Source: Euprymna scolopes (Eukaryota). From it: a DNA stretch of 64,000 bases. Below, one piece after another: positions 1 to 48,789 of the stretch; positions within the stretch are counted from its first letter, which is position 1; each line of letters opens with the position of its first letter. The stretch is taken from NCBI GenBank assembly GCA_053919585.1, contig CM132806.1; one strand, 5' to 3'. The translations under genes were made by a program, and so were the position numbers. The notes below the pieces were generated by a model that was not told the origin of the DNA, did no database searches, and saw only the letters and a program-made list of their open reading frames with translations.

Positions 1-829
1 TACAAAGTTTCTTTTTCTTCTGAGGAGGGTTTTCTCTTCAACGGGAAATTTTCCTATTAACGGTTTCAGGTTAACTTAAAATGCGTTAGAGCGTTCTCGC
101 CTCTTTTTTTCTCCTTTTAGAGCTTTCTTGCTCTTTAAATTAAAAAGGGAGATTAAAATACGTTGGCTATCATCATATTGTATGAATCCGAAGATTCTGT
201 TGTTGACATTATTGCTCAGATATTTTTCTAGACAGAATTCTTTCTAGAAAGACATCGGTTACTTATGGAAGAGACCACAGGAAGGTTGCGAACAACCTAA
301 GTGAAAGTAATTTTAGTGGAACAAACTGGATTCAAACTGGGGACACCCAGATCGTCAGTCCGTGTTGCTAACCGCTGAACCACAAATCGAGTAGAATTGC
401 TAATGAATCCCAAAACCCATTCTCTATCTAAAAACAATCTTCTTGAACTAATTTTAAAACGCGAGAAAGGCACAAAAGAAATTCCATCCCCAAACATTTT
501 ACCCTGTTTCTCTCTCTTCTCCCCTTTGGCCAACTACTACAGAAATAAATACACGTGGATATAATATATCTATGGTTATTCTCGCTCTGACAGGTCAAAT
601 AATACAGATATTCGTATTCATTGTCCTGTTCAGATTTAGACTATTATTGTTGTGAAGGAAAAAAAACTCTACAACAATTTATAAAATAAATAATTTTTAA
701 TGTTTCTGTTTAGAGAATTATTTGAATAAACTGGAAACTTTTTTACGTTTCTGAATTTTTCAGATGAGGATTGGTTATATCTATTATTATTATTCATCAC
801 CCTACTGTTCTCACCTTGAGTGTGATTTT

Positions 830-871
830 CACAACGTTTCGGTCGATATAACCTCCGACCTTCTTCAGGTG
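830..871 (-). ncRNA. Minimal type I hammerhead ribozyme motif in the left pseudo-LTR
   Basis: Minus strand reads CAC-CTGAAGA-A-GGTCG-gaggttatat-CGACC-GAAA-CGTT-GTG: CUGANGA and GAAA cores, a 5-bp stem II, a palindromic ACGT stem III and a CAC/GTG stem I. Confidence 0.8.
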
Positions 872-981
872 TATCTTACTGAATTCAGGAATGTTTCTGT
901 CGAACTCGGGAATTTGGACGGAATTTTTATCGGAACCATTTATTTACTTCACGGGGGTAGCTCGCTCTTGTTTCGTCAGCC

Positions 982-2120
982 ATAATAAGCTAACATCGGA
1001 TGCCTCACTCAAAGATCGCACTTGCATCTCAGTTGACAATATAATGGAGACGTTGACCTTCTGTGTAGAAACTACATACTTCGTGATGGTATCTGATATA
1101 TATCGGCAGGAAGGTCTGGCGATGGGATCACCAGTGTCCCCGGTACTGGCCAATGCATACATGGAATACTTTGAGGAAATAGCATTATGGTCAACACCAC
1201 TAAAGCCAACAATGTGTTTGCGATATGTAGATAACACATTCATACTCTAGCCCAATCAGGAAGATGTTCAAACGTTACTAGACCATGTGAACTCGATCCG
1301 TCCAACTATTCAGTTCACAATGGAAAAAGAAAATAACAATAAATTACTATTCCTACACGTGCTGATAACTCGCACAGATCAGGGGTTTATGTCATCTGTA
1401 TACCGAAAGCCAACTTTCACTGAACAGTATCTAAACTACAACTCCCACCATCCATATAATGTAAAGAAAGGAATTGTCCGTTGCTTACAACACCGAGCAA
1501 AAGCAATATGTAGTAACATCAGTGCATATCAAGAGGAGATAGACAGTTTAAGAGAAAACCTCAACCGTAACAACTATCCAGAGAGCATGACATCAGCTCC
1601 AAGAAATCTGAACCAAAAACAAAAGGACACGACTCAGAAACTCACCACAGTTTTTATACATATATGAAGGGCTTGTCTGAAAAACTTCAACGAATATGTA
1701 ATCCATATGACATCAGGACAGTATTCAGGAGTGATTCAACTCTCCGGAAACAGCTTGTGAGAGTCAAGCCCCCTACAGAAAAAAATCATGACTAAGAACT
1801 GTGTATATGAAATCCCATGTAAATGTAGAAAACTATACAAAGGTGAAACGTGTCGTCCGTTGAAAGTACGGTTAGAAGAACATCGAAAAGCCGTAGTACA
1901 TGGAGAGACTGAAAAGTCAGGTATAGCTGACCATATCTGGAAAGAAAAGGGAAACCATCTACCATTATGGGATGAAGTAAAAATTATAGACAGAGAGGAA
2001 CGGTGGAGAGTAAGACGACTGAAAGAAGCAGCATATATGCTGAGAAATAACCAACTGCTAAGTAGACTTAGTATAGAATTTAATACGATATGGGAACCAG
2101 TCATTACAAACAATAGATAA
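982..2120 (+). pseudogene. Penelope RT (C-terminal part) plus GIY-YIG endonuclease, broken by a stop codon and a frameshift
   Basis: ORF pieces 891-1250, 1287-1667 and 1788-2120; catalytic YVDD is mutated to YVDN. Confidence 0.9.
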
Positions 2121-2253
2121 TATATACAAGTAATAAGTAAAACATCAATATATATATACAAATAACAAGTATAGAGATAGATATACATTAATATATAGTA
2201 ATAATTAGTAATAAATGGTGATATTTACAACTAGAAATAAAAATTGTCCGTAA

Positions 2254-2348
2254 GGACCCGTGGCGCAGTGGTTAGAGTACTGGGAAAAATCAATTGTATA
2301 AGTGATATTCTCCTGAAGGTTGAAGGTTCAATTCTCAGTGTGGGCGAC
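2254..2348 (+). promoter_or_regulatory. tRNA-like Pol III A/B-box cassette in the Penelope 3' region
   Basis: A box TGGCGCAGTGG (2261-2271) preceded by a 7-nt acceptor-like GGACCCG; B box GGTTCAATTCT (2325-2335). Not a complete cloverleaf. Confidence 0.6.
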
Positions 2349-2483
2349 TGAAATATACATTTACGAATTACATAGCTGACGGAACAAGAGCACGCTACCC
2401 CCGTGAAGTAAATAAAGGGTTCCGCTCGGAATTCCGTCCAAATTCCCGAGTTCGACAGAAACATTCCTGAGTTCGACAAGATA

Positions 2484-2525
2484 CACCTGAAGAAGGTCGG
2501 GGGTTATATCGACCGAAACGTTCTG
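2484..2525 (+). ncRNA. Minimal type I hammerhead ribozyme motif in the right pseudo-LTR
   Basis: CAC-CTGAAGA-A-GGTCG-ggggttatat-CGACC-GAAA-CGTT-CTG. Same core as the left copy, with one stem I mismatch. Confidence 0.75.
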
Positions 2526-4656
2526 AAAATCACACTCAAGATGAGAATAGTAGTCTGATGAATAATGGAAACTTTTTGTCTCACATATTTTTTTACTGAA
2601 TAATTTCATTTGAATAGGTTGGAATTCCGGTCACATTTCAATGGCCTATTGATTTTTATATTTCCTTTCATGAATATTTTTGTATATATTACACTGAAAA
2701 GTTTCTAGTCAACAAGCTGACGTTAATTAAAATTATTTCTTTGAGACAATAAATTTAATTTAAGAGGCCAGAAACATTCTGGTTAAAATAGAAGTCTGAT
2801 ATTATTTTGAAATACTTCATTTAAAAGTAATTTTATTTGTTGGAAATAGAAACTGTCTGGTTATACTTTCAAAAAGAAACGTAAATAATGACCTACTGGA
2901 AACAATTTCTCTTTTAATCTGTTGCATATCGGAATGAAATTGACGAAACTTAACGCGATAAAAAATAAAATTGTGTTGCTGTGTCTATCCAAGCGGGGAG
3001 TTGGAATTAAGGCTGGCCGAGTGAAAAGTATTTGCTAATGGTGTGCTGTAAAGTCATATCAGCCCAGAGTGGGGGTTCAAGTACGTTGACCGATAAAGTG
3101 GAATAAAGTAGGCGAATTAAAATGACGAAATGCAATACTTATATTTAATCACGCAGAAATTACTAATTATCAATATTTTGCTTCAGACAAGGATTGCATG
3201 AAACTACTCTTAATTGACATCAGGGAACGATACTTAATATTGAGGACAGAATATTGGGAAGATTAAGGAGTATAATTAGTATCTTGGACCTAATTTGAAG
3301 ATCTTTTTTCTTCTGCCACTTGCGATTATTGGCAGGGAATATGGAAGTTCAAGTTTTAAACAAAAAAGGCATTTGAGGAAACACATCTATTACTTGGACA
3401 TAGCAAATTAGAAACGTTCTTTTATAGTCACAGAGATAACAGCTTGCTAGTTTTGTGGGTCTATTGGATGTTTTAATCTCTTTCGCTCCAAAAACCGTCA
3501 CACCTGAAAATCTAAAAAACATAAGGTGAACGCTACTTTGTTACAAATGCAAAGGACCTCGTTGGTTTCAAGATGGGTTACCATAGTATGCCTACTAAAG
3601 AGGATCACTCTGATGATAGCAGCGGTAATAAAGACGACGGAAAGAGCAATTGTAGTATTTCTACTGTGCTGAAAAAAATTACGACACAGTGATATATAAA
3701 AATGTCACGATATATCTTTGTTGTCGGCAATGGAGAAGATGTGTGCGTTAGTGTAGAAGAAAGGGATACGTTTTCTCGGGCCCAAATTGCCGGTCAATTG
3801 TTGATATTAATTTCGAGTGTTTATGTAATAATACCTGACTCTTCGCCCTCACTTTCAAACGTCGACTCTGGGATTTCACTCTTAATGTAACCAAGCCACA
3901 CTTTCAAAGCGTTTTATTTAGCGATGACGTGTTTTGTTCTGCCGCTAACATTTCACAGGTGGCTCCAATAAACAATTATTTTTGACAATCCACCATACTT
4001 GTTTTCCCGATCATATGGTTCGAATTCAATTGACGATTATTTTATTTGTAGCAATCAATCATATTCAATTGTTTTCTTCTGGTCTGGTGCAACGTTTATC
4101 TACTGACAAATCATTTTTCAGCAAATTCGACTTGAATATTTAAATAAATAAATGGATGCCAGCACAGAGAAAACACCTGCTTAGCTGGCACTGTAAAAGA
4201 TGAGAGGGTGAGAAGAACTTTAAGGACTATAAAAACTTTAGAGATCCAGAGGGAAAAATGGAGATTGTAAAATTAAAGAATATTATCAAGGAGAAAAGAA
4301 AAAAACGATACCAAACCACCCAAGCCAAGTCCAACTTCTTCATCGTAAATGTCCAAACCCAGTTGCCTTCCTCATATCAACTCATCAAGCATTACCTTAA
4401 GGGCATAATTTGATAGATAATGGATTTTAACAAAAATTTCTACAAATTCAAATTTGACTTCAATACATATTGATTCTAAAAAAGAATAAAACTAAAGTAC
4501 CACACTAAACATATAAGATCGAATCACACTTCTCTTTGAATTCATTACTCAAATATTCAACAAACTTTAGTTACTGGTTCTTCTTTTTTTTTCTCAATAA
4601 TTATTCAAACACAAAATAAAATTCTGGTTAAGTGAAAAAATATTAATAAAATGGTA

Positions 4657-4659
<3 letters not shown>

Positions 4660-4722
<63 letters not shown>
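4660..4722. repeat. (CT)n microsatellite
   Basis: Direct dinucleotide run. Confidence 0.98.
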
Positions 4723-4725
<3 letters not shown>

Positions 4726-5019
4726 AAGAATAAGCTAACAAATATTTTTCTTTTACAAAGGAGTCACAACTTATCAAGGCCCGGGGTCCGCCCAGGGATA
4801 AGAATTAATGAGTGTACGGTAGCCAATCATGCAATATCGTAGTAATCCTTAGTAGTGGAAATTTGGTAAATTAGATTACTTAAGGAGACGGCTCCTCAAG
4901 AACTTATCCACGGTAGATTTGGAGACGATTGAAACGGAAGAGAGTTTCACAGGCGTGCAGTTCTAAGAAAGAAACTTTGTTCATGGAATTTAAGTTTAGT
5001 CACAGATAAAGGTTCTAAA

Positions 5020-5900
5020 ATGGCACTCATGCTAGCTCATTTAGGTTTTGGGGGATTCTCAATGTCGAAGTAAGCGTATTCTGTATACAAGAGACCCAAC
5101 ATTATTCGAATATGTGAATATGTTTGTGTGCTGGCAAAGGATTTACATGTTCATTAAGCATACTTTGATGATCACTTGAGACGACTCTCTTGGCCTGTAT
5201 GGCACTCTTTAGGTGTGTCGGTTAAAGGAAGATTCTGCATTCTGGGTGTAATGATAGAGTATAGTGTTTCAATTTAGTTGTTTTATGCAGCTCATGGCCG
5301 GAGTGAGCATATTCAATCATCTCGGCAGAATCAGCGGTTAATGAATACTTCTTGGCAGTATATTTTAGTGGGAGATTTGAATGCTTTCTTGCATCCCAAT
5401 TTAGATGATGGAACTAATGCTAGTAGGAGCACTAGCCCAGATCAGAATGCTGTGGCATTTTTCATGAATTTGTAAATAAGTTTGACTTTGCTAACAAGTA
5501 TTGAAATGAAAAATCTTGCGATAAAGTATAGACTTGGATAAGCCTGACTCTGGCAGTTTTAAAAAGAGTTTATCTAAGTCTTTTAGAATGTCCAAGTTTT
5601 CACACTATAGTTCATTTGAGCTATTGGTTAATCGGGGTTTGAGTAAATTTTTATAGGTCTAAGCCTAAGATAAGTTAAGAGAAGTCGAACACTCTATTAT
5701 TTAAAGTGAAACACTACCAGGAACAGTTAGAAGTAACAATAAAGCGAGAAGTAATAATTGGCAATAAGTGGTGGAAAATTATTTACATTCGGGGGGGGGG
5801 TCACAATTGTTATGAGTTCACCATAAAACATTCCATTAAAGTACTGGTAAGACAAACGCAGGGATACAACATTGCGGCGATGAGATGATAAAGTGCTGAA
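5020..5900 (+). pseudogene. Decayed APE endonuclease of an L1/Tx1-like LINE
   Basis: Residual motifs VFCIQET (about 5075-5095) and ILVGDLNA (about 5362-5385); many stops. Confidence 0.5.
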
Positions 5901-23001: not shown

Positions 23002-26000
23002 TGTTGTGAAGTGAGAACAAAAGAAACGTTTACCTAGAATAAAGGCTTTAATAAACTAATAGAAAATACTAGAGAGCACACAGCAAGGGGAGATAATCAG
23101 ACAACACAGTAAACACAAAATACAAGAGTTTTAATATTATGCCATTCTTTCCCTTCTCAAAAAATTAAAGTTATAGTATTAATTAAAGTTAATTTGTCAC
23201 AGTCATTGATAACGTGATGGTTTTCGACGTTTGCATAAGGATCGTCATAGGGTCCCTGGGCATTCAGATTTAGGAGGGGGTAATAATTCCTCCAAGTCCA
23301 TAGGTACCATGGGGGAAGGTTTATGTTCAGGAAAGGAAAAATCAGCATCAGCATCAGGATCAATGGGCATTGGAGAAGATATTTCAGGTGTTGTATTTTG
23401 TTCTTCGGTGGAAGTTAGATTAGCTAAGTTATTCTCAGCACAAGGATTGTTCGACTTTTCTGGATGAACCAAGGTTTCAGTTGCGGTCAGCTTTTCAGAT
23501 AGACTCAAGTTTCCAATGGGAGCTAGGTCACGTACAGAGACCATAGGCTCTTGTCCGTCATTAAACTGCACGTGGGCGTACTGAGGGTTTGCTTTTAAAA
23601 GTTGCTCCTCATCGACTAAGGGTTCATATTTACTATGGAGAACATGACGAGGTAGTAATACAGGTTCTGGTACAGTTCGCCAAGAGGGTAGAAAATGACC
23701 ACTAAGTGACTTCCGTTGGTTGGAAAATAGTCTCTCATAAGGAGTGGCATTAGTTGCAGTACACAGTAGAGATCTGATTGAGTGTAATACTATGGAAAGT
23801 ACAGTCTCCTACTGTGACTCTTTGAGGTTACTAGAATCCAATGCCATGGATACAGTTTTCCATATAACGTCATTATATCGCTCACATTGTCCATTTCCTC
23901 GAGGGTTGCTATGCCTAAACTTGTGAGATACTCCCGTAGGTCTTTGGATACAAATGAAGTTCCTCGATCAGAGGGGATGTATGAGGGTGTCCCAAACATT
24001 GTAAAAATTTGGAATAAACATTCGATTACTACATAAGTAGTTATATTTGCACAAGCAAAAGCAAATGGAAAACGTGAGCACTCGTCCATTACTACTAGTA
24101 GGTACTGGTTCTTCAATGTAGATGGGAGCGGTCCTTTGAAATCTATGTTGAGTTTTTCCATTGGCTGAGTAGCTTTGATAAGAGGGGTTGAGTTTAGAGA
24201 GTGGAACCTTGGTTTCCATCGTGCACATATGGGGCATTCAGCGCACACTTTCTTGATTTCTTCTATCGAATAAGGAAGATTTCGAACTTTCACAAAATGT
24301 GCCATTCGTGTGATTTCCGGGTGGCAGAGAGACATGTGGATATCTGATAGTTTAGTTTTGTTGTTGATGGCTCCACAATAAGTTTGTGAGAGTGTATCAG
24401 CAGAAATCTTATTTCTTCCTGGCCGATACATGATATCATAATCGTAGCATCCCAATTCCATTCTCCATCTTTGAATTTTATTGTTTTTAATTTTTCCGGG
24501 TCTTTTTGAATTGAACATGTAGTTCACTGCTTCTTGGTCAGTAACTATTATGAAACGCTTAGTAGATAGGTAGTGTGACCACTTTTTGATTGCTTCCACA
24601 ATAGCATATGCTTCTTTTTCCACGGAAGCATGCTTGCATTCAGCATGAGAAAGAGACCTCGAGAAAAAGGCAATTGGTCGACCAGCTTGATTGAGCGGTA
24701 TCTAAGGCATCAGTTTCAATCACTAGGGGAAGATTTTCATTTATTGAATGGAGCAGAGCCTTTCCGATTTCGTCTTTAATGTTATTGAAGGCCTTCTTAG
24801 TTCTATATTGATGGGAAAAGAGTCATTGTTAATAAGAGGTTTTATTTTCTCGGAGAATTTCGATTGCGAATAATATGAAAATAATCCAATGACTCAGCGC
24901 ATAGCAGTGTTGTCTTTCAGAAAAGGTAGTTCCTTGAGTGGTCATAGTCGTTCACCATCTGGTTTAATTGTTCCGTGTGTTATTGTGTAACCAAGGAAAT
25001 CTATTGAGGTAGTTGACAATATAGACTTTGCTTCGTTGAAAGTCAGGTTAAGGACCTGAGCATCTTTCGGAAATTTTGCAAGATTTTCGTCATGCTCCTT
25101 TTGGGTATTCCCGACTATAACTATATTGTCAACATATGCATAAACTCCTTGCAACTTATGTTGCTTGATGATGCTGTCCATTGTTCTTTGGAAACAAGCG
25201 ACACCATTAGTGACGCCAAACAGAACTCTATAAAACATAATTTTCTGTTCACCTCAAAGGCAGTGTAGATTTTCTCTTCCTCTCAAATGGATATTTGATA
25301 CACACTCTTTAAATCCAGGGATCTGTAAATTTTATATCTGAAAATTTCAGCAGCAAGATCGTCCATCCTTGGTAGAGGGCCAGTGTCTAATAATGTGAAT
25401 CTATTGATTGTTCGACTGTAATCAACAACCAATCTTTTTTATGAGACGCTCACCAGTAACTATTAAAACTTGGACTCTTCAAGGTGAGGTACTTTCTTCA
25501 ATTACTCCTTCCCGAAGCATTTTTCAATTTCTGACCGTATAAATTGTGTAGAAAATGTGTAAGGAAAGTCCTTTAAAATTACTGCGCCCTCTGTAGATGT
25601 ATAAGGAAAATCCTTTAAAAGTACTGTGCCCTCTGTAGATGTGTAATGTTGCAGCAACGTAAAGCAATTCAATAACAAGTAAACACCGGTTCTGCACGGA
25701 ATCATACTAGCAAGGTACCTAGATGGACGCGAACGGTTACTCAGAATGGGCCCAACAATTGGTTACTCAGAACGGTCCCAACAACGGTAAGATATGCTCA
25801 CACCCACACGGCACGAGAAGCAACAGCAACACGATTCCCGACCAAGTCAATTATCGCTCTCCCAACGTCTTTCAATCACCCACTTTTATGGCCGTTGCAG
25901 GCCGGCTAAATTTGCATATTGCGAGAATTCATGTGACTTTGCGAGATATCATCCTTTCCAAAGACGGCAGCCGCCATCTTGATCTTTCTTTCTCTATTTT

Positions 26001-27675
26001 CGGTCGGTGACGCCGAGCCGGCCCCGAGGTAAATCTTTCCTTTTCGTCGGTCTCTCTTACGCACCCACACAACACACAAACACACGGGCGCTTGTCTCCT
26101 GGATGCACATTACAAATTGTTCATCTTGATTTCCAAACCTCCTAGATTTAGTGGTAATAGGTTTACAGTCCGGAGAAAGGTTTGCAAAAAGAGATGTTGT
26201 TTCTATTAAAGCAGACTGTACACTGCAGGAAACAGAGCTAGGGATTTGGAGACTTCCCTTATGACCACCAAAGTTAAAAGAACACTAGAATACTGCCTCA
26301 TGAAGTTTTGGTCGAGAATGACATCACTGCAAAGATCCGGTAAAATTTCAAATTTTGTGTTAGCATACCACTCACCTTGTAAATTGATGTTGATGGTACA
26401 CTGTCCTTTCACTGGAGCATTAAGTGATGAGGAGGCCATATGTACCCTTCGAGTAGCTGGTTGTACTTTCAATTTATTTTTCTTAACAAAGTCTTCCGAG
26501 ATGAAGGATCCAGAGCTTTCAGTGTCTATCATAGTTGTTGTTTCAGTTTTTCCGACTAGAATGTATACAGAAGTTGGTTCTAAACTACCCGAAGAAGAAG
26601 CAGATGTATTTTCAAAAAAAAATGTTTTTCTTTGTTAGAGGATCAGACATTATGGACATTAGCTTGTGTGATTGTGTAGATGCTGACGTGGCTTGAAATT
26701 GAATGGAAGCAGATGTAGATTTCTGAGAATTTTGACATGCCCTCGCAAAATGACCTTTAACATGACATTTTTTACAAATGGCGGACCTCACTGGACAAAA
26801 TTTCCGATCGTGTCCAGAATACCCGCAAAAATAGCAAATAGATTTAGTTTTTATGAAAGCAGAAGTATCACAAAATTCATCCTCAGATTTATTATGACAG
26901 TTTGGTTCGTCGTTAACAGTAGCCACCGTGTCATAAGAACCAGTGTAAGATTCAGAATAAGCGTAGGATTCAGAATTTTTCTGTGCGGAATAAATAGCTC
27001 TAGCTTGGTCGATGGTTGTATTTAAAACAAGTGTTCTATTCTCAAGCAATCTCTGCCGGATAGAGTTGGAATGTAAACCAGTAATGAAGGGATCACTGAC
27101 GCAAGCGTCTCTGTTTTCAATAGCATTAACTGCCTGAATTTCACAACCTTTAGCTAACAACAGTAACGATTCTACATATTCATCAATGTTTTCATCGTCT
27201 TTTTGTCTTCGAGTGGACAACATATGTCTAGCAAAAATTTCGTTAGTGGGTTTTATATATAAATCACTGGGACGATTCAGAGCGGAGGCATACGTCGCAT
27301 GTTCTGTGATGTATTTGTATATGTCGGAAGAAACATGATTTATCAAAATGTCTAATCTGTCAATATCAGTTGTGTTCTCGGTGGTTGTTCTTCATATGAG
27401 AGACGATATAGTCCGAAGTCAATGTTTAAATGTTTTGTTTGTGCCGGTTGATCTAAGAGAGATATCCAGACGATTAGGAATTAAAAATTTGTCCATATTT
27501 TTTTTTTTTTTTTTTTTTTGATTAGCTCATTAAATTGTTGTGAAGTGAGAACAAAAGACACGTTTACTAGAATGAAGGCTTTAATGAACTAATAGTAAAT
27601 ACTAAAGAATACAGAGCAAGGGGAGATAATTAGACAACACAGTAAACACAAAATATGAGTTTTAATATTACGACA
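23002..27675 (-). mobile_element. Ty3/Gypsy LTR retrotransposon B (short LTRs, related to A)
   Basis: LTRs at 23002-23144 and 27536-27675; perfect TSD ATATG; PPT at 23145-23160; gag with CCHC knuckles (26612-27346), protease (IDT), RT (YVDN), RNase H/integrase (23790-24623). Confidence 0.95.
25547..26114. mobile_element. Solo LTR nested in the pol gene of Gypsy B
   Basis: TGTA...TACA termini, 5-bp TSD AATTG, internal tandem duplication of about 42 bp; pol sequence resumes on both sides. Confidence 0.85.
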
Positions 27676-28467: not shown

Positions 28468-30776
28468 ATGTCGGAAGGAGACATGAGTGCAATAAACAGA
28501 CCAGTAGCTAGCATAAGACCACCACCACCCCTTTGTATGGAGCAGAATTTGACAGAGAATTGGAAGCTATTTAAGCTGAAATGGCATAATTATACTATTA
28601 TTACGTATCTGACAACCCAGTCGATATAATATCAAACTGCACTTTTGCTTCATACATTAGGAGATGATGCTTTGAAAGTGTACTACGGGTTTCACTTTTC
28701 AACGCCCGAAGATGAAGGAACGCCTATGGAAATTATTCAGGCGTTTGAGAAATATGCTATAGGGGAAACAAATGAAACTTACGAGCGTTATGTTTTTCAC
28801 ACGAGAAAGCAAGGAGAAAAGGAGACCATGGAATCTTTTATTATGGCACTTCGGACATTTGTAAAAACGTGCAATTTTTGTGACAATTGCGTTTCCTCAG
28901 TACTCAGAGATCAAGTCATGCTGGGAATATGTAACCCTCAGACACAAGCTGACTTACTTAAAATAAGACAGCTGGATTTACAAAGATGTATAGACATTTG
29001 TAAGCTGTCTGAAAATGCTACGTTACAAGCCAGTATCCTAAGGCCTGAGAGAGTGAACCGAGTGGAGTTCAGACACAAGAAAAAGCTAGGGAAAAAAACT
29101 GTGAGAGAATGCAGAGCGTGTACACTGCAACATGGACTGAACAAGGAAGTATGTCCTGCATTTGGCAAGACATGCTACAACTGTAATGGAAAAAATCATT
29201 TTTCTGCGAAATGCAGACTAGCAAGGAAAAAGAAGGTGCAGACTGTCAAAACACAACAATATGAGGATCAAGATGACAGTAGTAGTTCTTCAGACTATGG
29301 GCAGGTAGACAGTGTAACAATAAAAGAAAAAGTTAACGCTGTGAATCATGAGGTGATAAAAACGGAAATGATGGTGAAAGGAAAGCCAATTATTTTTCAG
29401 CTTGACAGTGGAGCATCAGTAAACATACTGAATGAGAAGCATGTAATGGGGAAAACACTGGAGCCTTCAAATAAGACACTGGTCATGTGGAATGGGACAG
29501 AAGTGAAGCCATTGGGAGAGTGTCGAGTCAAAATGATAAACCCCAAAACTGCACAAAAATATGCAGTTAAGTTTGTCATTGTAAAAGAGCATTTCCATCC
29601 TTTACTGGGAGCAAATGCAATTCAGAAGATGGCACTCATCAAAATCAACCAGGACCAGTTCAAAATGATAGCCAAAATTTCTCAAGTGGATGAATCCAGC
29701 AGCCAGAACTCTGACAGCATTATAAACGAGTTCAGAGATGTATTTAAGGAGGAATTGGGTCAGTTACCTGGAGCGGTACATTTGGAGGTGGATACAGCAG
29801 TAACAACAAATGTAGCTGCAGCACGAAGAGTGCCAGTCGCACTGAAAGACAAATTAAAAGTTGAATTGGAGAAACTGGTTAAAAAGAAAGTTATTGAACC
29901 AGTAAGTGAGCCAACTCCATGGGTAATTGCATTGGGATTGGTGATGAAGAAAAATGGAAATCTAAGGATTTGCATAGACCCAAGACCACTAGATAAGGCT
30001 TTGAAAAGGGAATATTTCCAACTACCTACATTGGATAATTTGCTGCCAGAACTGGCTGACAGCAAAGTATTTTCCACCCTGGATTTACGAGATGGATTTT
30101 GGCATTTGAAATTGGATGAAGTCAGCAGTCGTTTGACTACATTTACCACGCCATTTGGTCAGTTCGGTGGAAGGTTTTACCATTTGGGATTACTCCAGCT
30201 CCAGAGATATTTCAAAAGGCCCTCTTTAACAATGTATGGGATTTAGAGGGTATGATCAACAAAGCAGATGATCTTCTGGTGATTAGGAAAGGTAAAACAA
30301 TGGAGGAAGCAACAGCTGATCATGACAAAAAACTGAGAAAACTGTTGCAGAGATGTAACACTAGGAAAGATATAGATGTTTGTCGTAGGTTCAATTTTCC
30401 AGCATTCAATTGAACCTACGACAAACATCTATATCTTTCCTAGTGTTACACGAATGACCCGGTCTAAGCCGGGTTGACATGCTAGTATATATATGTGTAT
30501 AGGTGTATATACATATATGTATGTTCATGAATTAAAATGTGGCACGCGTCTGCGGATGAAATGTCAGAAATTTACAAGCTAAACGGGAATTGCTTCAATA
30601 TTTCTCACAAATATAAACAGACCTTGTTATTGTTATAAAAAATGTAACAGAAAGGAATCTGGTTACGTGGATGTTTTGAAAAGATTGACAGGAAAAATTC
30701 ACAGAAGGAAAAAGATTGCAGTTGGAGATTTGATTGTCAACCAAGTAGACGCCACGATAATTCTCTCTGTCGCTCT

Positions 30777-30824
<48 letters not shown>

Positions 30825-32929
30825 CTCTATCTACCATAAGTAAGCACAACAGGAGAAATAAAAAACGGACTGTTGCTTACACCAATGGTTGTTGTGTTTT
30901 GAATTCTTAGAAAAAGGGTTTATAATATAACACTAGGTCACACGATAACCAGTGATGGGTTACTTCCTGACCCTGGGAAGGTAAAAGCTATAAAATAGAT
31001 GCCATGCCCAACAGATGTTAAAGGCATGCAAAGATTGGCTGGATTTGTGAACTACTTGACAAAGTTTCTGCCACATATTTCCGACGTGATGGCCCCAATT
31101 CGGAATTTAGTGAAGGCAGATGTGCCATGGACATGGTCCCAAATTCATGAAAGAGCTTTTGAAAAAATTAAAAGGTTAGTGAATGAGGCACCAGTATTGA
31201 GATACTATGAACCCAACAAACCTTTGGGCATTCAATGTGATGCAAGTAAGAAGGGTATGGGGGCTGCACTACTGCAGGAAGGTCAACCTCTAGCCTATAT
31301 CAGCCGTGCGCTGACTGACACAGAAACCTGATATGCGCAAATTGAAAAAGAACTGCTAGCAGTAATCTATGCTACCGAACAGTTTCATCAATATACGTTT
31401 GGTCGACAGATAGCGGTACTGACCGATCATAGGCCATTAGAAGCTATCATGAAAAAAGAGTTGGGAAAATGCCCCAAACGACTGCAAAACATGCTGATGT
31501 GATTACAGGCTTACGATGCTACCGTTTTGTACCATCCAGGTAGGAAAATGTTCATTGCAGACACGCTATCAAGAGCATATATCCACGGAGTGAACAGCGA
31601 AGATATGGACAATGAAGATGATGTCAAAGAAGCTGAATACATTCCTGTAACAGAGAGGAGGCTGCTTGAACTAAGCTCAGCCACAAAAGAAGACTGAAGC
31701 ATGCAGCAGTTGCAGCAAGTAATTGTGGAGGGATGGCCAGACGAAAAATACATCTTGACCCAGAGGTGAGACCGTTTTTTGGTATACAAAATGAAATGAC
31801 TGTACAAGATGGGTTAATTTTCAGGGGTAATCGTGTAGTGGTTCCAATTACCCAGCGGGCTATACTGAAGGAGAAGCTGCATTCTACACACCTAGGAATA
31901 GAAGGATGTTGCAGAAGGGCAAGAGAATGTTTGTATTGGCCAAACATGAACAGTGAGATTAGAGACTATGTTTCAAAATGCCCCACATGCACAAAATATG
32001 AAGTAGCCAATCCAGCCGAACCATTAATGGCTCATGAAGTTCCTAACAGACCCTGGGCGAAAGTGGGAGTGGACCTGTTTAAGTTTACAGATAGAGACTA
32101 TCTTTGTACTGTGGAGTGCATGAGCAACTTCTGGGAAATTGATCATCTTCAAAATACAGAAGCTAAGACAGTAGTAACCAAACTGAAACATCATTTTGCA
32201 CGACATGGAATACCAGATCAGGTGGTAACTGATAATGGGCCTCAGTTTAGCAACCAGGAATTTTCCACCTTTGCTAAAAAGTGGTGTTTTATACATACAC
32301 TTGTCAGTCCATACAATAGCAAGGCGAATGGGAAAGTGGAATCTGCAGTAAAAATGGCAAAGAACCTTTTCCGGAAAGCGATGGAGGATAAGGTTGATCC
32401 ATACCTAGCAATGTTGGATCATAGGAATACACCATCTAAGGGTCTCTTATCACCAGCTCAGAAGCTGATGTCAAGGAGAACAAAAACACTTCTCCCAACT
32501 AGAGAGGAGTTACTCAGACCAGAATTGGCCAAAAACCTCAAAAAGTGTGTCAAACGAGACAGCAGGAGACAAGAACAGTTTTTTAACCACAAAGTGCAAC
32601 TACTTCAACCGTTACACCCTGGAGATGTAGTATGGATTAAACCCCACATAAAGGGTCAGAGAGAGTGGAAGAAGGCAATTGTATGGGAGAGACTGGATGA
32701 GCGGTCATACAATGTAAAATTGAATGGGGAGCTATATCAACGGAATAGGGTCGACTTGGAAAAAACTGCAGAAGCACCCCCACTTACATCGTTGATTCAC
32801 CAGCTATGTGGAGTGCAGAGCGAAATAGTCAGGAATGAAGGTAATGGCATAGAAGAGAGAGATGACATCGGCCAACCTGGGTATGAAGGTGAATTGGGAG
32901 AGGGAGTTAACCCGACACCACCCCAATGA
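28468..32929 (+). pseudogene. Gag-Pol polyprotein of Gypsy C, disrupted by frameshifts, stops and an insertion
   Basis: CYNCNGKNHFSAKC knuckle, LDSGA protease, LDLRDGFW RT, CDAS RNase H, integrase HHCC plus VTDNGPQF..NGKVE. Confidence 0.92.
30354..30937. mobile_element. Non-coding insertion in the Gypsy C RT, with a perfect 43-bp hairpin and a Helitron-like 3' end
   Basis: Arms at 30354-30396 and 30408-30450; ACCCGG-n6-CCGGGT plus CTAG at 30457-30485; TAACACTAGG repeated at both ends. Confidence 0.7.
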
Positions 32930-44900: not shown

Positions 44901-45177
44901 TGTGCACTATCGATGCAGGTATGTTGGGTGGTTCTACTTTGGCTTTTACTTTACTGTGCCAGCATTGTCATACTCTTGTCAGTTAGTTGACTAGTACTGC
45001 TATTAGACTATAGTCTTTAACTATGTCTACAAATGTGTTGAGTCCTCTTCATAGCAGCATTTTGCTGGCTGCCTTCATGGTTGGTTGGTACTTTCCTACA
45101 TATAGTACCTTTGCCTGCCACTGACATGTCAGGTTAACTCCTTTTAACACTTTGCTAGGTTAAAGTTTGGCACATTA

Positions 45178-45201
45178 CACAGTGGGTTCGCAAGCGGACA
45201 T
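45178..45201 (+). repeat. Left RSS-like TIR: heptamer + 6 bp + CAAGCGGACAT
   Basis: CACAGTG-GGTTCG-CAAGCGGACAT, read directly. Confidence 0.9.
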
Positions 45202-45936
45202 ATGGAATTTTTGCAACTTCCCCAAATGACTATAAAACTTAGAAAAGTGCAAAGTTCAGTTTCTGTAGTATCAAAAAATGGTATTATTTATCTTCTAAAA
45301 ATGATTATTGATCAAGATATGCCAGCTGGAAGCTTGCGAATTTTGATCGTTCACAACCTTGCGATAACATAAAAATTACCAAGCAGCAACTTTGGGTGTA
45401 CCTGAGTAATTGTCAAAAATTTCTTCCAAAACCTCTGTACATGTCCCATAAGTCCCCGAAATATAAGGCCAGATGTCTAAAATTGAATTAAATGCGAAAA
45501 GTTGGATCTATGGTCAGCTATTGGGCCTCTTTTGTGGGATTTTCCGGAAAATTTATGACACAGATTAACAGTTTTTTCCTTAAAAAAAGCCCGAAATTTG
45601 ACCCCGATCTGTACACTTTCACCGACGATTGCAAAAAAAAGCCCGAGATAAAAAAATTTATGCTTCACATATAAGAATCTAGACAAATAACACTATCATA
45701 ATCCAATTGGACAAAAAAATTCATTCTCGGGCACCATATTAATTCTGACGTAATAAAAAATATTGAGGATACCCAATTATTGTAATTTTGTGTATCCAGC
45801 AAAAATCGTCAAACGCGTATATTCATATAACTAATCAAATTTTTTTCCACATATATGACCCATACCACTTTTCCTATGTTTTTGGGGTGTAGAATCCAAA
45901 TCTGGCCTTTAAAACACCTGAAACTTAACTGTTTTC

Positions 45937-47214
45937 ATGATAAATCCAAATTCTAGCACATCATATGGTGAATTGGTATGGGAGAATCCTTCGCATGCAT
46001 CTTCCTCGTCTTGTCGCCCCGTGATGCTACTGATGGGAAACGAAAACAGAGAGAACCTTGATATCGTTACAGACATCCAGAAAGAGAGAAAGGATTGTGA
46101 ATTCATTGTCCAACATCACAGCAAACCGGTGAATATCAAGGTCGATGCAACTATGTCTATGATTGATGGTAAGATGCATAGTCTTATATCTGGTTTGGGT
46201 GGGGCATTTTGTTGCTTGTGTGCATACAGTAAAGAACAATGTCATGATTCTGTCTGTATCACCACTGGTTTCAAAATTGATCGTTCCTTGGAACAAACAC
46301 TAGCCCTCTGTGAGAAAGGAATCCATCTTCCAGAAAACCGAAAGGTTGGTGATTATGATGATCGCAAAGGTATCACCCAGGATCCTATTACCATCGAAGA
46401 TATCAACAACTTGCATCCTCTCCATAATTTGCTGAGATGCTTTGGATGGATCTTCAAGATTTGTTATCATGTCACTGCAGGACATTATTCATGGTCAGAA
46501 GCAAAGGTGGACGTATCCAACCGTATCGCTAGAGCATTGGCATTTCTAAAACAAGCGAAGGAACAGATCCAGACCAAGGTAAAGGAAGAGACATCAATCA
46601 CCATGGAGAAACCTGATCCAACAGGTCACGGGGGTACGTCTACGACAGGAAATGTGGCGTCACTTATGCTCAATACTAGCAACAGAAGGTTGTTGACTGA
46701 TGGAATTGATAACACCGAATTGAAGTTAAAGATTGACCGCATTATACTTCGTATGGCGGTTATTCTAACGATAAACAACTCGAACAAGAACATCAGGGTT
46801 GCTGAATTTCAGGAGTTTTGCCGTGAAACATACCTTCTTGTCAATAAGATATCGTGGATTCAAATCAGTCCAAGTGCACACGTTGTTCTTGGTCACAGTG
46901 CGGAACTTATTGAACAGAACGACGGCAAAGGTTTGCTGAACTTTACGGAGTGTGGCATCGAAGCAAATAACAAATTCCTGAGGCAGTATCGAATGAACTA
47001 TGCACGGAAAACAAGTCAATTTGACAATTTATCCGATTGTATTAACAGACTGTGGGATAAAAGCGACCCTATGGTGTTGAAAGTATGTGAACGACTACAG
47101 TGCACTCATTGTAAAGGAGCAGGTCACACAATACGAAGCTGTGATGAGTTGAAGGAAGCACTTCATCAATGCAACAGCGAATATGAAGCACTAGTTGCCT
47201 TCTTGTCTTACTGA
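45937..47214 (+). CDS. RAG1-like/Transib transposase, C-terminal catalytic core plus CTT-like tail (first catalytic Asp region absent)
   Basis: WENP..SSSSCRP, MIDGK (D77), CCLC, PLH, GGTSTTGNVA, HVVLGH, TECGIEANNK (E342), ARKTS..NLSD, SDP, CTHCKGAGHTIRSC; 425 codons without a stop. Confidence 0.9.
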   Translation: MINPNSSTSYGELVWENPSHASSSSCRPVMLLMGNENRENLDIVTDIQKERKDCEFIVQHHSKPVNIKVDATMSMIDGKMHSLISGLGGAFCCLCAYSKEQCHDSVCITTGFKIDRSLEQTLALCEKGIHLPENRKVGDYDDRKGITQDPITIEDINNLHPLHNLLRCFGWIFKICYHVTAGHYSWSEAKVDVSNRIARALAFLKQAKEQIQTKVKEETSITMEKPDPTGHGGTSTTGNVASLMLNTSNRRLLTDGIDNTELKLKIDRIILRMAVILTINNSNKNIRVAEFQEFCRETYLLVNKISWIQISPSAHVVLGHSAELIEQNDGKGLLNFTECGIEANNKFLRQYRMNYARKTSQFDNLSDCINRLWDKSDPMVLKVCERLQCTHCKGAGHTIRSCDELKEALHQCNSEYEALVAFLSY

Positions 47215-47349
47215 TTCTTTTTATTTAGGGTCTATTTTGTTCCAAGTTACGTTATTGATCATTCTATTCATAGTTCATTATGTTTTTCAATATTGAATTA
47301 CAGTGCGTATCGAATTGTTATTACATAGCTGCGGATTTATTACGAACTT

Positions 47350-47895
47350 TCTTGCAAATTCTGTTCAAAAACGCATTCTTAGGCCTTTTACGTCGAAAAA
47401 CCTGTTTCCCGGAATGTTGACCCGATTTCTCAAAATTAGGGGTTGAGGCACCCAGACTCCCAAAAATTTGAAAATTATACATGTAAAATTGACTTCTCTA
47501 CATTCCACGCCATTGTACGGTTCTAACAAGCCCAAAATGGCCTCCGTATCAGTATTATTTAACAAGTTCTGTCAAAAAACGTGTTTTTTGGATTTTGGCC
47601 AGATCGCCCAAAATCAGGGGTTTTGGCCCCTTTGACCCCCCAAAATTTCAAAAATTTTAGAGAAATGTTTTTTTCTGTCTTCTACTCCCTCATTCGGTTC
47701 TAACAAACCCTAAATGGCCCCTACATCGATATTATTTGACGAGTTCTGTCAAGAAACTCGTTTTTTTGGATTTTGGCCAGATTGCCTAAAATCCAGGCTT
47801 TCGGCCCCCTTGACCCCCCAAAATTTCAAAAATTTTTGGGAAATGTTTTTTCCTGTCCTCTACTTCCTCATAAGGTTCTAAAAAGCCCTTATGGC
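47350..47895. repeat. About 178-bp subterminal tandem repeat (about 3 copies) in the right arm of the transposon
   Basis: GGTTCTAA(C/A)AA recurs at about 47519, 47696 and 47874; units share TTCTGTCAA..GGATTTTGGCCAGAT..GACCCCCCAAA. Confidence 0.85.
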
Positions 47896-47930
47896 TATAA
47901 ATGAAGTAGTTTTTTCTAATTTATAGTTAA

Positions 47931-47966
47931 ATGTCCGCTTGACCCCCCCCCTCTGGGCCCACTGTG
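47931..47966 (-). repeat. Right RSS-like TIR: heptamer + 18 bp + CAAGCGGACAT
   Basis: Reverse complement reads CACAGTG-GGCCCAGAGGGGGGGGGT-CAAGCGGACAT. Confidence 0.9.
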
Positions 47967-48789
47967 CATTATTCACTGAGTGCAACCAGCTTGCATCCTG
48001 ATCCGTCGACCTCTAGCGTGATCTCAATGGACAGTGAACCTGCTTCCACCCAAAGTGTAAAATCCCTACCATTTACATACTAATCACTTTGTAAAAGATT
48101 GTCCTGATGTATTCCATTCAATATTTCCTTCACCATAATCCTGAGTTGTTATTTCATCATCCCTGCCAGTTGTAACTTTGTTGGCGTAATGTTTCATGTA
48201 TACTGTAACTACTCAATGCCTTCTGCAAACTGGAAAATGACCAGTCTTCCACATACTGGAAAGATTGTTTGCCACATCATGACTGATAGAGATTTTGAAC
48301 TATCTCCCCCCCCCCCGTATCTATTACAGTCTACTGCCGTCGCTGTGAATGTGCAATCCAAACATTTGTGTTCCTTCTTGAAACTACTCGGGTAAACTCA
48401 CAGGTCAGTCAAAATTTTCCCAAATATTTCTTCACTTGTTCTGCAAATGTGAGACATTAATTGTCGAAAATGATGTCCATGTATGATGATGTGGCTGGTT
48501 GAATTGACATATAGTGGAAGTTTACTAAGTTTATAATGGATTCCATTATCAATGCAACTTTCATGCTAAGTTGTGTGAGGCAATACCTTTGCCTCTCAAT
48601 ATCACTGTCTGAAAGGGACACAATGATTTGTATGTATGCACTTTAAGATAAGATTTCTCCAATTCAATATGACAGCACCTGAGTCTTCATGGCACCAGTC
48701 CTGCAACTTCTGTGCATATATACACCAGCATTTACTGGAAAAGCGCCAACAAAGTTATTGAGCTCTCTGTAGTCTGTCACAAATCACAC

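What the first reader, a model, noticed from the sequence alone, without database searches (positions are those of the whole stretch)
46210..47142. Mosaic transposase: Transib-type core with a RAG1-type ZnC2 extension and a ProtoRAG-type Cx2Cx3GHx4C tail
Seen in sequence: MIDGK and GGTSTTGN are Transib-style (RAG1 has GYDEK and MNGN). After CCLC there is a long segment, GFKIDRSLEQ...DDRKGITQDP, resembling RAG1 SITRSHAEN...DRVKGVSAKP. The tail CTHCKGAGHTIRSC (47101-47142) fits Cx2Cx3GHx4C exactly. Established: that motif is the C-terminal tail of invertebrate RAG1L implicated in TIR binding, and the extended ZnC2 belongs to the RAG2-binding surface that insect Transib lacks. Inference: RAG1L modules are present without RAG2, either before its capture or after its loss.
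Basis: partly seen in the sequence, partly recalled or inferred. Interest (0 to 1): 0.8.

Follow-up and report, generated by a model that had tools for sequence, protein, structure and literature searches.

The report
Truncated Subgroup I Transib transposon copy
This is an internally deleted copy of a Transib jumping gene; its enzyme really has a RAG1-like zinc-domain extension and zinc-knuckle tail, but Transibs of exactly this type were described in 2022, so it is a new member of a known kind.

Summary
CCLC is at 46210, the extension at about 46267-46410, GGTSTTGN at 46630 and the Cx2Cx3GHx4C tail at 47101-47142. MIDGK lies just upstream, at 46159.

A profile of 59 relatives aligns continuously with RAG1 and BbeRAG1L through the extension. 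HzTransib has only about 11 residues there. A folded sub-model aligns 131-149 residues to RAG1, 145 to BbeRAG1L and 102 to HzTransib.

The combination is not a new mosaic. Tao et al. 2022 (PMC9435367) define "Subgroup I Transibs" by this alpha11-alpha12 region, the CTT1 tail and asymmetric TIRs. They already propose these elements as Transib-to-RAG1L intermediates.

The window element (45178-47966) fits the class: 5-bp TSD CATTA, CACAGTG heptamers, a shared 11-mer after 6-bp and 18-bp spacers, and no RAG2L.

Residues 1 to about 290, including the first catalytic Asp, are deleted. This copy is non-autonomous, but full-length copies exist in the same organism.

The scan has noted other Transib families with the same features elsewhere in this genome.

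The parts
45173..45177 (.). Left 5-bp target-site duplication, CATTA
   Evidence: Read directly. It is identical to 47967-47971.
45178..45201 (+). 5' TIR: heptamer CACAGTG (45178-45184), 6-bp spacer, 11-mer CAAGCGGACAT (45191-45201)
   Evidence: The same layout is found in the full-length relative L001 at 517. Contigs of DNA and RNA runs break here and continue into different flanks.
45178..45957 (+). 5' non-coding part of the element retained in this copy, ending at the internal deletion junction 45958/45959
   Evidence: Only 45177-45298 matches L001 at DNA level. At 45958/45959 the contigs of the same organism branch. One branch continues upstream into codons for MYMFRIENLK of the full-length transposase.
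45958..47214 (+). Transposase remnant: 418 codons plus stop, corresponding to about residues 291-709 of the full-length protein. No internal stop or frameshift.
   Evidence: tblastn against P0001/P0002 gives 85-88% aa identity. DNA identity to L001 is 92%. dN/dS against L001 is 0.20.
46159..46173 (+). MIDGK, containing the second catalytic Asp (D359 in P0002 numbering)
   Evidence: Invariant column in alignment A1. It aligns to HzTransib MIDGK and RAG1 YDEK.
46210..46221 (+). CCLC, the two zinc-binding Cys of ZnC2 (C374, C377)
   Evidence: Invariant or near-invariant columns. It aligns to RAG1 CTLC and HzTransib CYLC.
46267..46410 (+). RAG1-type zinc-domain extension, equivalent to alpha11-alpha12
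   Evidence: Profile positions 392-441 align with RAG1 and BbeRAG1L but have no counterpart in HzTransib. The sub-model aligns 131-149 residues to RAG1 693-863, 145 to BbeRAG1L and only 102 to HzTransib.
46630..46653 (+). GGTSTTGN, a Transib-type motif at the position of RAG1 MNGN (the R848 region)
46879..46905 (+). HVVLGHSAE, the two zinc-binding His of ZnH2 (H597, H602)
   Evidence: Near-invariant columns. It aligns to RAG1 HKTLAH.
46948..46974 (+). ECGIEANNK, containing the third catalytic residue Glu (E624)
   Evidence: Near-invariant column. It aligns to RAG1 SEGNESGNK and HzTransib SEEASEARNK.
47101..47142 (+). CTT1 zinc knuckle CTHCKGAGHTIRSC (Cx2Cx3GHx4C), followed by 23 more residues
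   Evidence: The motif is in the family consensus. It is exact in 21 of 54 relatives. It gives a weak hit to retroviral nucleocapsid knuckles. The structural alignment to BbeRAG1L extends through it, to model residue 693.
47516..47889 (.). 178-bp tandem repeat (2.1 copies) in the 3' non-coding part of the element
   Evidence: A homologous 172-bp array is found in L001.
47931..47966 (-). 3' TIR: heptamer CACAGTG (47966-47960), 18-bp G-rich spacer, 11-mer CAAGCGGACAT (47941-47931)
   Evidence: L001 has the same layout with a 16-bp spacer.
47967..47971 (.). Right 5-bp target-site duplication, CATTA

Best explanation
Window 45178-47966 is a non-autonomous, internally deleted copy of a single-gene Transib DNA transposon of the published 'Subgroup I' type.

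The full-length enzyme is about 707 aa and is known from 88-89% identical relatives. It is an RNase-H-fold DDE transposase with these parts: an NBD-like N-terminal domain; catalytic D259, D359 and E624; a Cys2-His2 zinc domain that keeps the RAG1-type alpha11-alpha12 segment; and a C-terminal CCGHC zinc knuckle (CTT1).

By homology with HzTransib, BbeRAGL and RAG, I infer how it works. It should bind the bipartite ends (a CACAGTG heptamer plus an 11-mer after a short or a long spacer). It should cut by nick-then-hairpin and insert with a 5-bp duplication. The knuckle and the NBD-like domain would supply the DNA contacts outside the heptamer.

The window copy lost residues 1 to about 290, including the first catalytic Asp. 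It cannot act on its own. It could move only through full-length copies present in the same organism.
For: Shown:
- The ORF is homologous to HzTransib, BbeRAG1L and RAG1. The profile E-values are 9.8e-84, 3e-63 and about 3e-44; single-sequence searches agree.
- The AF2 model of P0002 has pLDDT 90.5. It matches HzTransib at Z 32.3, RAG1 at Z about 32 (including the NBD, from model residue 88) and BbeRAG1L at Z 28.6.
- The extension is shared with RAG1 and RAG1L but not with HzTransib.
- The tail motif is conserved across the family.
- The TSD is CATTA, and the heptamer plus 6/18-bp spacer plus 11-mer ends are conserved in L001 as 6/16.
- The full-length element L001 517-5055 carries a single ORF of at least 80 aa.
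- The other large ORFs in the window are gypsy pieces, with no kelch domain.
- The window copy begins at 45958, with stops upstream.
- Contigs of the organism branch at 45958 into full-length coding sequence. They also break at both element ends into different flanks, so the family is multicopy.
- dN/dS against L001 is 0.20.
- The class definition is in PMC9435367. The window protein is 38% identical and colinear, through the extension and the tail, with P0093. P0093 is a protein closely resembling the published MleTransib_3931 on visual motif comparison.
Against: - No rooted phylogeny with the published Subgroup I and II sets was built, so clade membership rests on architecture and on similarity to one ctenophore-type relative.
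- Pfam hmmscan gave no significant family for the ORF or for P0002, although precomputed annotation lists PF26100 RAG1_RNase_H.
- The structural comparison uses predicted models, and the sub-model Z-scores (6.4-8.6) are moderate.
- All biochemical steps (hairpin formation, which domain binds the 11-mer, the role of the knuckle) are inferred from homologues, not shown.
- L001 itself lacks a matching TSD.
Confidence: 0.85

Rival explanations
1. The truncated ORF is an expressed, functional product, for example a domesticated or regulatory C-terminal fragment (zinc domain plus knuckle) that binds transposon ends and modulates transposition.
For: It has 418 intact codons after the deletion. An ATG is fortuitously in frame at 45937. 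Contigs from runs classed as RNA hold over 80% of its 31-mers, and a few single-cell RNA reads lie on it.
Against: The family is multicopy, so the reads and contigs cannot be assigned to this copy. The RNA contigs could be DNA carry-over or read-through transcripts. The start codon lies in unrelated sequence and no promoter evidence was found. Intactness is expected for a young deletion derivative. The dN/dS of 0.20 reflects the divergence between subfamilies, not selection on this copy.
Confidence: 0.05
2. The family is a RAGL (RAG1L) lineage that lost RAG2L secondarily, rather than a Transib that never had it.
For: It carries the RAG1-type alpha11-alpha12 segment, the CTT* knuckle and an NBD-like domain, and its length is colinear with BbeRAG1L. 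Loss of RAG2L has been raised in the literature as a possible origin of Transib.
Against: Overall sequence is clearly closer to HzTransib than to BbeRAG1L or RAG1 (9.8e-84 against 3e-63 and 3e-44). The active-site-proximal motifs are Transib-type (MIDGK, GGTxTTGN). No RING/ZDD or zf-RAG1 N-terminal domains were detected. Tao et al. place proteins of this architecture in the Transib clan, with bacterial Transibs sharing the same features.
Confidence: 0.07

Closest known systems
Subgroup I Transib transposons (Tao et al. 2022, Natl Sci Rev, PMC9435367), e.g. MleTransib_3931 of Mnemiopsis leidyi, PbaTransib, HvuTransib-9_HM
   Same: A single-gene element without RAG2L. It has the alpha11-alpha12-equivalent zinc-domain segment, the CTT1 Cx2Cx3GHx4C tail, asymmetric bipartite TIRs that begin CACAGTG, and an NBD-like region. 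The window protein is 38% identical and colinear with P0093, a protein closely resembling MleTransib_3931 on visual motif comparison.
   Different: It is a different family, only about 38% identical, in a different host that earlier scan notes call probably a mollusc. Its spacers are 6 and 16-18 bp, and its second conserved element is the 11-mer CAAGCGGACAT. The window copy itself is internally deleted.
HzTransib transposase of Helicoverpa zea (PDB 6pqn, 6pqx; Subgroup II)
   Same: It is the best sequence match (E 9.8e-84 with the profile). The DDE core, the MIDGK and G-T-x-GN motifs and the Cys2His2 zinc site are shared. Z is 32.3 over 466 residues.
   Different: HzTransib lacks about 40-50 residues of the zinc-domain extension (Hz 243-253 against profile positions 392-441). 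It also has no CCGHC knuckle in its tail.
BbeRAG1L of the amphioxus ProtoRAG transposon (PDB 6b40)
   Same: The alignment is colinear through the zinc-domain extension, with 145 of 161 sub-model residues aligned. BbeRAG1L has a C-terminal Cx2Cx3GHx4C tail (CTT*), shown there to bind TIR DNA.
   Different: BbeRAG1L works with a RAG2L partner encoded in the same element and has N-terminal zinc-finger/RING regions. Its active-site motifs are VDEK and MAGN rather than IDGK and TTGN. It is more distant in sequence (3e-63).
Mouse RAG1 core (PDB 4wwx, 6cg0 and others)
   Same: The same overall fold, including the NBD (model residues 88-155 align to RAG1 391-459). The same Zn ligands are present. The extension aligns to RAG1 residues of about 745-795.
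   Different: RAG1 has an acidic tail without the CCGHC knuckle, needs RAG2, and is a domesticated recombinase. Identity is only about 17-18%.

Membership tests
Transib/RAG1 DDE transposase superfamily | RNase-H-fold core homologous to HzTransib and RAG1 | tested here: met
   Profile E-values are 9.8e-84 for HzTransib and 3e-44 for RAG1. VIA Z is 32 to both.
Transib/RAG1 DDE transposase superfamily | Complete D-D-E catalytic triad in the copy under study | tested here: not met
   The window copy keeps the second Asp (46159-46173) and the Glu (46948-46974). It lacks the first Asp (D259 of P0002), because homology starts at 45958. Full-length relatives have all three residues.
Transib/RAG1 DDE transposase superfamily | 5-bp target-site duplication and TIRs starting with a CAC-type heptamer | tested here: met
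   CATTA flanks both ends, and the heptamer is CACAGTG at both ends.
Subgroup I Transib (Tao et al. 2022) | alpha11-alpha12-equivalent segment in the zinc-binding domain | tested here: met
   The alignment with RAG1 and BbeRAG1L is continuous, with a break only in HzTransib. The sub-model aligns 131-149 residues to RAG1 against 102 to HzTransib.
Subgroup I Transib (Tao et al. 2022) | CTT1 tail with Cx2Cx3GHx4C | tested here: met
   CTHCKGAGHTIRSC is at 47101-47142. The motif is conserved in the family.
Subgroup I Transib (Tao et al. 2022) | Asymmetric TIRs | tested here: met
   Heptamer, then a 6-bp or an 18-bp spacer, then the same 11-mer. L001 has 6 and 16 bp.
Subgroup I Transib (Tao et al. 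2022) | Phylogenetic placement in the Subgroup I clade | tested here: inconclusive
   The window protein is 38% identical and colinear with P0093, which closely resembles the published MleTransib_3931 on visual motif comparison. No rooted tree with Subgroup II, RAG1L and bacterial anchors was built.
RAGL transposon (RAG1L + RAG2L) | A kelch-type RAG2L gene inside the element | tested here: not met
   The full-length relative L001 517-5055 has only the transposase ORF. The 2789-bp window element has no room for a second gene. The other large ORFs in the window are gypsy-derived.
RAGL transposon (RAG1L + RAG2L) | RAG1L-type N-terminal zinc-finger/RING (ZDD) region | tested here: not met
   A Pfam scan of full-length P0002 gave no RING or zf-RAG1 hit at E<=0.01. 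Structural matches to RAG1 begin at the NBD.

The most novel reading that the evidence does not exclude
This could be a currently mobile Subgroup I Transib family in a marine invertebrate. Full-length copies exist in the same organism. Near-identical sequence occurs in runs under five organism labels, and 89-92% relatives occur in open-ocean metagenomes. It would then be live material for asking what the RAG2-binding-surface homologue and the CTT1 knuckle do in an enzyme that has no RAG2. It would also let a 6/18 pairing rule be tested, as a possible precursor of the 12/23 rule.
Probability: 0.3. Interest if true: 0.45.

Novelty: new member of a known kind. Interest (0 to 1): 0.25.

Why it matters
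Subgroup I Transibs are the published candidates for the stage just before RAG2 capture in the origin of V(D)J recombination. Another young family would be a useful extra substrate for biochemical tests of that model. This one has perfect RSS-type heptamers, clearly asymmetric ends and full-length relatives. It does not change the model. The combination of features is already described, and the copy in this window is a dead deletion derivative.

Tried and rejected
- Pfam scans of the ORF and of full-length P0002 gave nothing useful.
- tblastn of full-length relatives found no N-terminal part anywhere else in the 64-kb window. A split or intron-containing gene is therefore rejected.
- The apparent tblastn extension to 45889 is spurious, because it contains stops and does not match.
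- The idea that the tail is a chance CCHC match is rejected by its conservation in the family.
- The idea that the long zinc-domain segment is particular to this protein is rejected. All 58 aligned relatives have it.
- Liu et al. 2019, the HzTransib structure paper, could not be read because it is not held.
- The organism could not be named because run labels are coded.
- No rooted tree was built. No Subgroup II, RAG1L or bacterial anchor sequences were available as tool-supplied ids, and I did not retype published sequences.

Full report
**What is there**

The window holds one long ORF in this region, 45937-47214(+), 425 codons.
- MIDGK at 46159-46173, slightly upstream of the stated start
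- CCLC at 46210-46221
- GFKIDRSLEQ...DDRKGITQDP at 46267-46386
- GGTSTTGN at 46630-46653
- CTHCKGAGHTIRSC at 47101-47142

A sequence search of solved structures hits HzTransib (E 1.8e-17), amphioxus BbeRAG1L (2.7e-6) and, weakly, mouse RAG1.

**The ORF is a remnant**

The closest database proteins (P0001 and P0002, 88-89% identical) are 707-709 aa. They are encoded as one uninterrupted ORF on marine-metagenome contigs.

tblastn of these proteins places only residues of about 291-709 in the window, and nothing else matches anywhere in the 64 kb. True similarity starts at 45958 (TSYGELVW). The seven codons before it, including the ATG, are unrelated sequence preceded by stop codons.

The missing part contains the NBD-like, DDBD and pre-RNase-H regions and the invariant first catalytic Asp (D259 in P0002 numbering). 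The window copy keeps the second Asp, both Cys and both His of the zinc site, the catalytic Glu and the tail. It cannot be an active enzyme.

**The element**

- The ORF lies in a 2789-bp element, 45178-47966, flanked by a perfect 5-bp duplication CATTA.
- Both ends start with CACAGTG.
- The same 11-mer, CAAGCGGACAT, follows after 6 bp on the left and after an 18-bp G-rich spacer on the right.
- The full-length relative L001 (element 517-5055, about 4.5 kb) has the same layout with 6-bp and 16-bp spacers. It also shares a ~175-bp tandem repeat in the 3' non-coding part.
- L001 has no second ORF of 80 aa or more inside the element, so there is no RAG2L.
- The other large ORFs in the window are gypsy retrotransposon pieces.

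I laid contigs and reads of runs that hold this sequence on the window:
- Contigs break at 45177/45178 and 47966-47968 and continue into different flanks, so the family is multicopy with these exact termini.
- At 45958 one branch continues upstream into codons for MYMFRIENLK, which is the full-length transposase.
- Full-length copies therefore exist in the same organism, and this copy is an internal-deletion derivative.
- The retained coding part differs from L001 with dN/dS 0.20. This is the signature of a lineage that evolved as a working transposase.

**Is the "RAG1-type extension" real?**

I aligned 59 full-length relatives (alignment A1), drawn from a family with 2193 representative clusters at E<=1e-3.

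A profile of A1 scores 9.8e-84 against HzTransib, 3e-63 against BbeRAG1L and about 3e-44 against RAG1. The alignments are informative:
- Against RAG1 and BbeRAG1L the profile runs continuously through positions 392-441, with RAG1 ITRSHAEN...RVKGVSAKP aligned to the family's GFxIxRsxE...RxGxTxxP.
- Against HzTransib the alignment splits into two pieces, and only Hz residues 243-253 are left to cover those 50 positions.

An AlphaFold model of P0002 is confident (pLDDT 90.5). It matches:
- HzTransib at Z 32.3 over 466 residues
- RAG1 at Z about 32 over 486-552 residues, including the NBD from model residue 88
- BbeRAG1L at Z 28.6, with the alignment extending through the tail knuckle to residue 693

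I also folded residues 345-505 alone (pLDDT 89). That sub-model aligns:
- 131-149 residues to mouse RAG1 within 693-863 (most chains ending at 845), Z 6.3-8.6
- 145 residues to BbeRAG1L 797-947, Z 6.4
- only 102 residues to HzTransib 220-325, Z 4.1

The active-site-proximal motifs are Transib-type (MIDGK, GGTxTTGN), also as proposed.

**Is the tail real?**

The Cx2Cx3GHx4C motif is part of the majority consensus of A1. It is exact in 21 of the 54 relatives that have a C-terminus and near-exact in 3 more. It weakly resembles retroviral nucleocapsid knuckles. HzTransib has no Cys at this position.

**Is it new? No.**

Tao et al. 2022 (PMC9435367) divide Transibs into two subgroups. They state the following:
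- Subgroup I Transibs and bacterial Transibs, but not Subgroup II (which includes HzTransib), keep the alpha11-alpha12 RAG2-binding-region equivalent.
- All Subgroup I Transibs have asymmetric TIRs.

Their supplement prints MleTransib_3931 with GLGGAFCDLC, the long segment, GKGGTTSGN and a CKKCSGRGHIGRYC tail. The window protein is 38% identical and colinear, through the extension and the tail, with P0093, a protein closely resembling that published sequence on visual motif comparison.

Martin et al. 2020 document the motif as the hallmark of invertebrate CTT*. Martin et al. [quoted passage not shown]

**How it most likely works**

Shown here:
- the fold, the catalytic and zinc ligands, the end structure and the TSD
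- the single-gene organisation
- the deletion in this copy

Inferred from HzTransib, BbeRAGL and RAG biochemistry:
- A full-length dimer pairs one short-spacer end with one long-spacer end.
- It nicks at the heptamer border, forms hairpins on the flanks and integrates with a 5-bp stagger.
- The NBD-like domain (residues of about 88-155, with KRP in place of GRP) is the likeliest reader of the distal 11-mer.
- The CTT1 knuckle contacts TIR DNA next to the heptamer, as CTT* does in BbeRAG1L.

What the alpha11-alpha12 segment does without RAG2 is unknown.

The window copy can move only in trans.

**Rivals**

- An expressed, functional truncated protein is unlikely (about 0.05). Contigs from runs classed as RNA hold the sequence. 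However, the family is multicopy, the ATG is fortuitous and there is no copy-specific evidence.
- A RAGL lineage that lost RAG2L is also unlikely (about 0.07). The sequence is clearly closer to HzTransib, and the RAG1L N-terminal zinc modules are absent. Only a rooted tree can exclude it.

**Context from the scan**

Earlier notes on other pieces of this genome describe several further Transib families with asymmetric ends, NBD-like segments and CCGHC tails. They call the host probably a mollusc. I found the 2022 paper independently, and those notes agree with my reading.

**Verdict**

The copy in the window is a dead deletion derivative. It is a new member of a known kind, of modest interest.

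Noticed in passing
window 23790-24623(-), 26612-27346(-), 28645-30246(+), 31733-32929(+): These large ORFs carry integrase, RT-RNase H, aspartyl protease, reverse transcriptase and Gag zinc-knuckle domains. They are pieces of gypsy-type LTR retrotransposons.
   Followed up: partly
window 55382 and 55718 (+): A repeated CACAGTGGTGAAAAGCCATATTCTTGTAATGT... sequence reads as HTGEKPYSCNVC linkers. It looks like a tandem C2H2 zinc-finger array inside the AT-rich stretch 52-60 kb, where GC is 0.26-0.29.
   Followed up: no
L001 512-516 and 5056-5060: The full-length metagenome copy has intact bipartite TIRs, but its flanking pentamers (CGCAA and GCGAC) do not match. It shows no TSD, possibly because the metagenome contig is chimeric or because copies recombined.
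   Followed up: no
window 45149 / 47967: One contig of run X3 joins 45149 to 47967 with 33 unrelated letters in between (depth 7, short side 20). It might be a related empty or paralogous site. It is unexplained.
   Followed up: no
window 45958-47216: Near-identical sequence (0.82-0.90 of the 31-mers) is held by runs under at least five coded organism labels. It is also held by mollusc, invertebrate and seawater metatranscriptomes. An N-terminal relative at 62-64% identity is annotated in the sea louse Caligus rogercresseyi. The family has a wide or patchy host range, and horizontal transfer or contamination has not been resolved.
   Followed up: partly
P0002 (full-length relative): Precomputed annotation lists PF26100 RAG1_RNase_H for these proteins. 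A fresh hmmscan against Pfam-A returned no family at E<=0.01.
   Followed up: no
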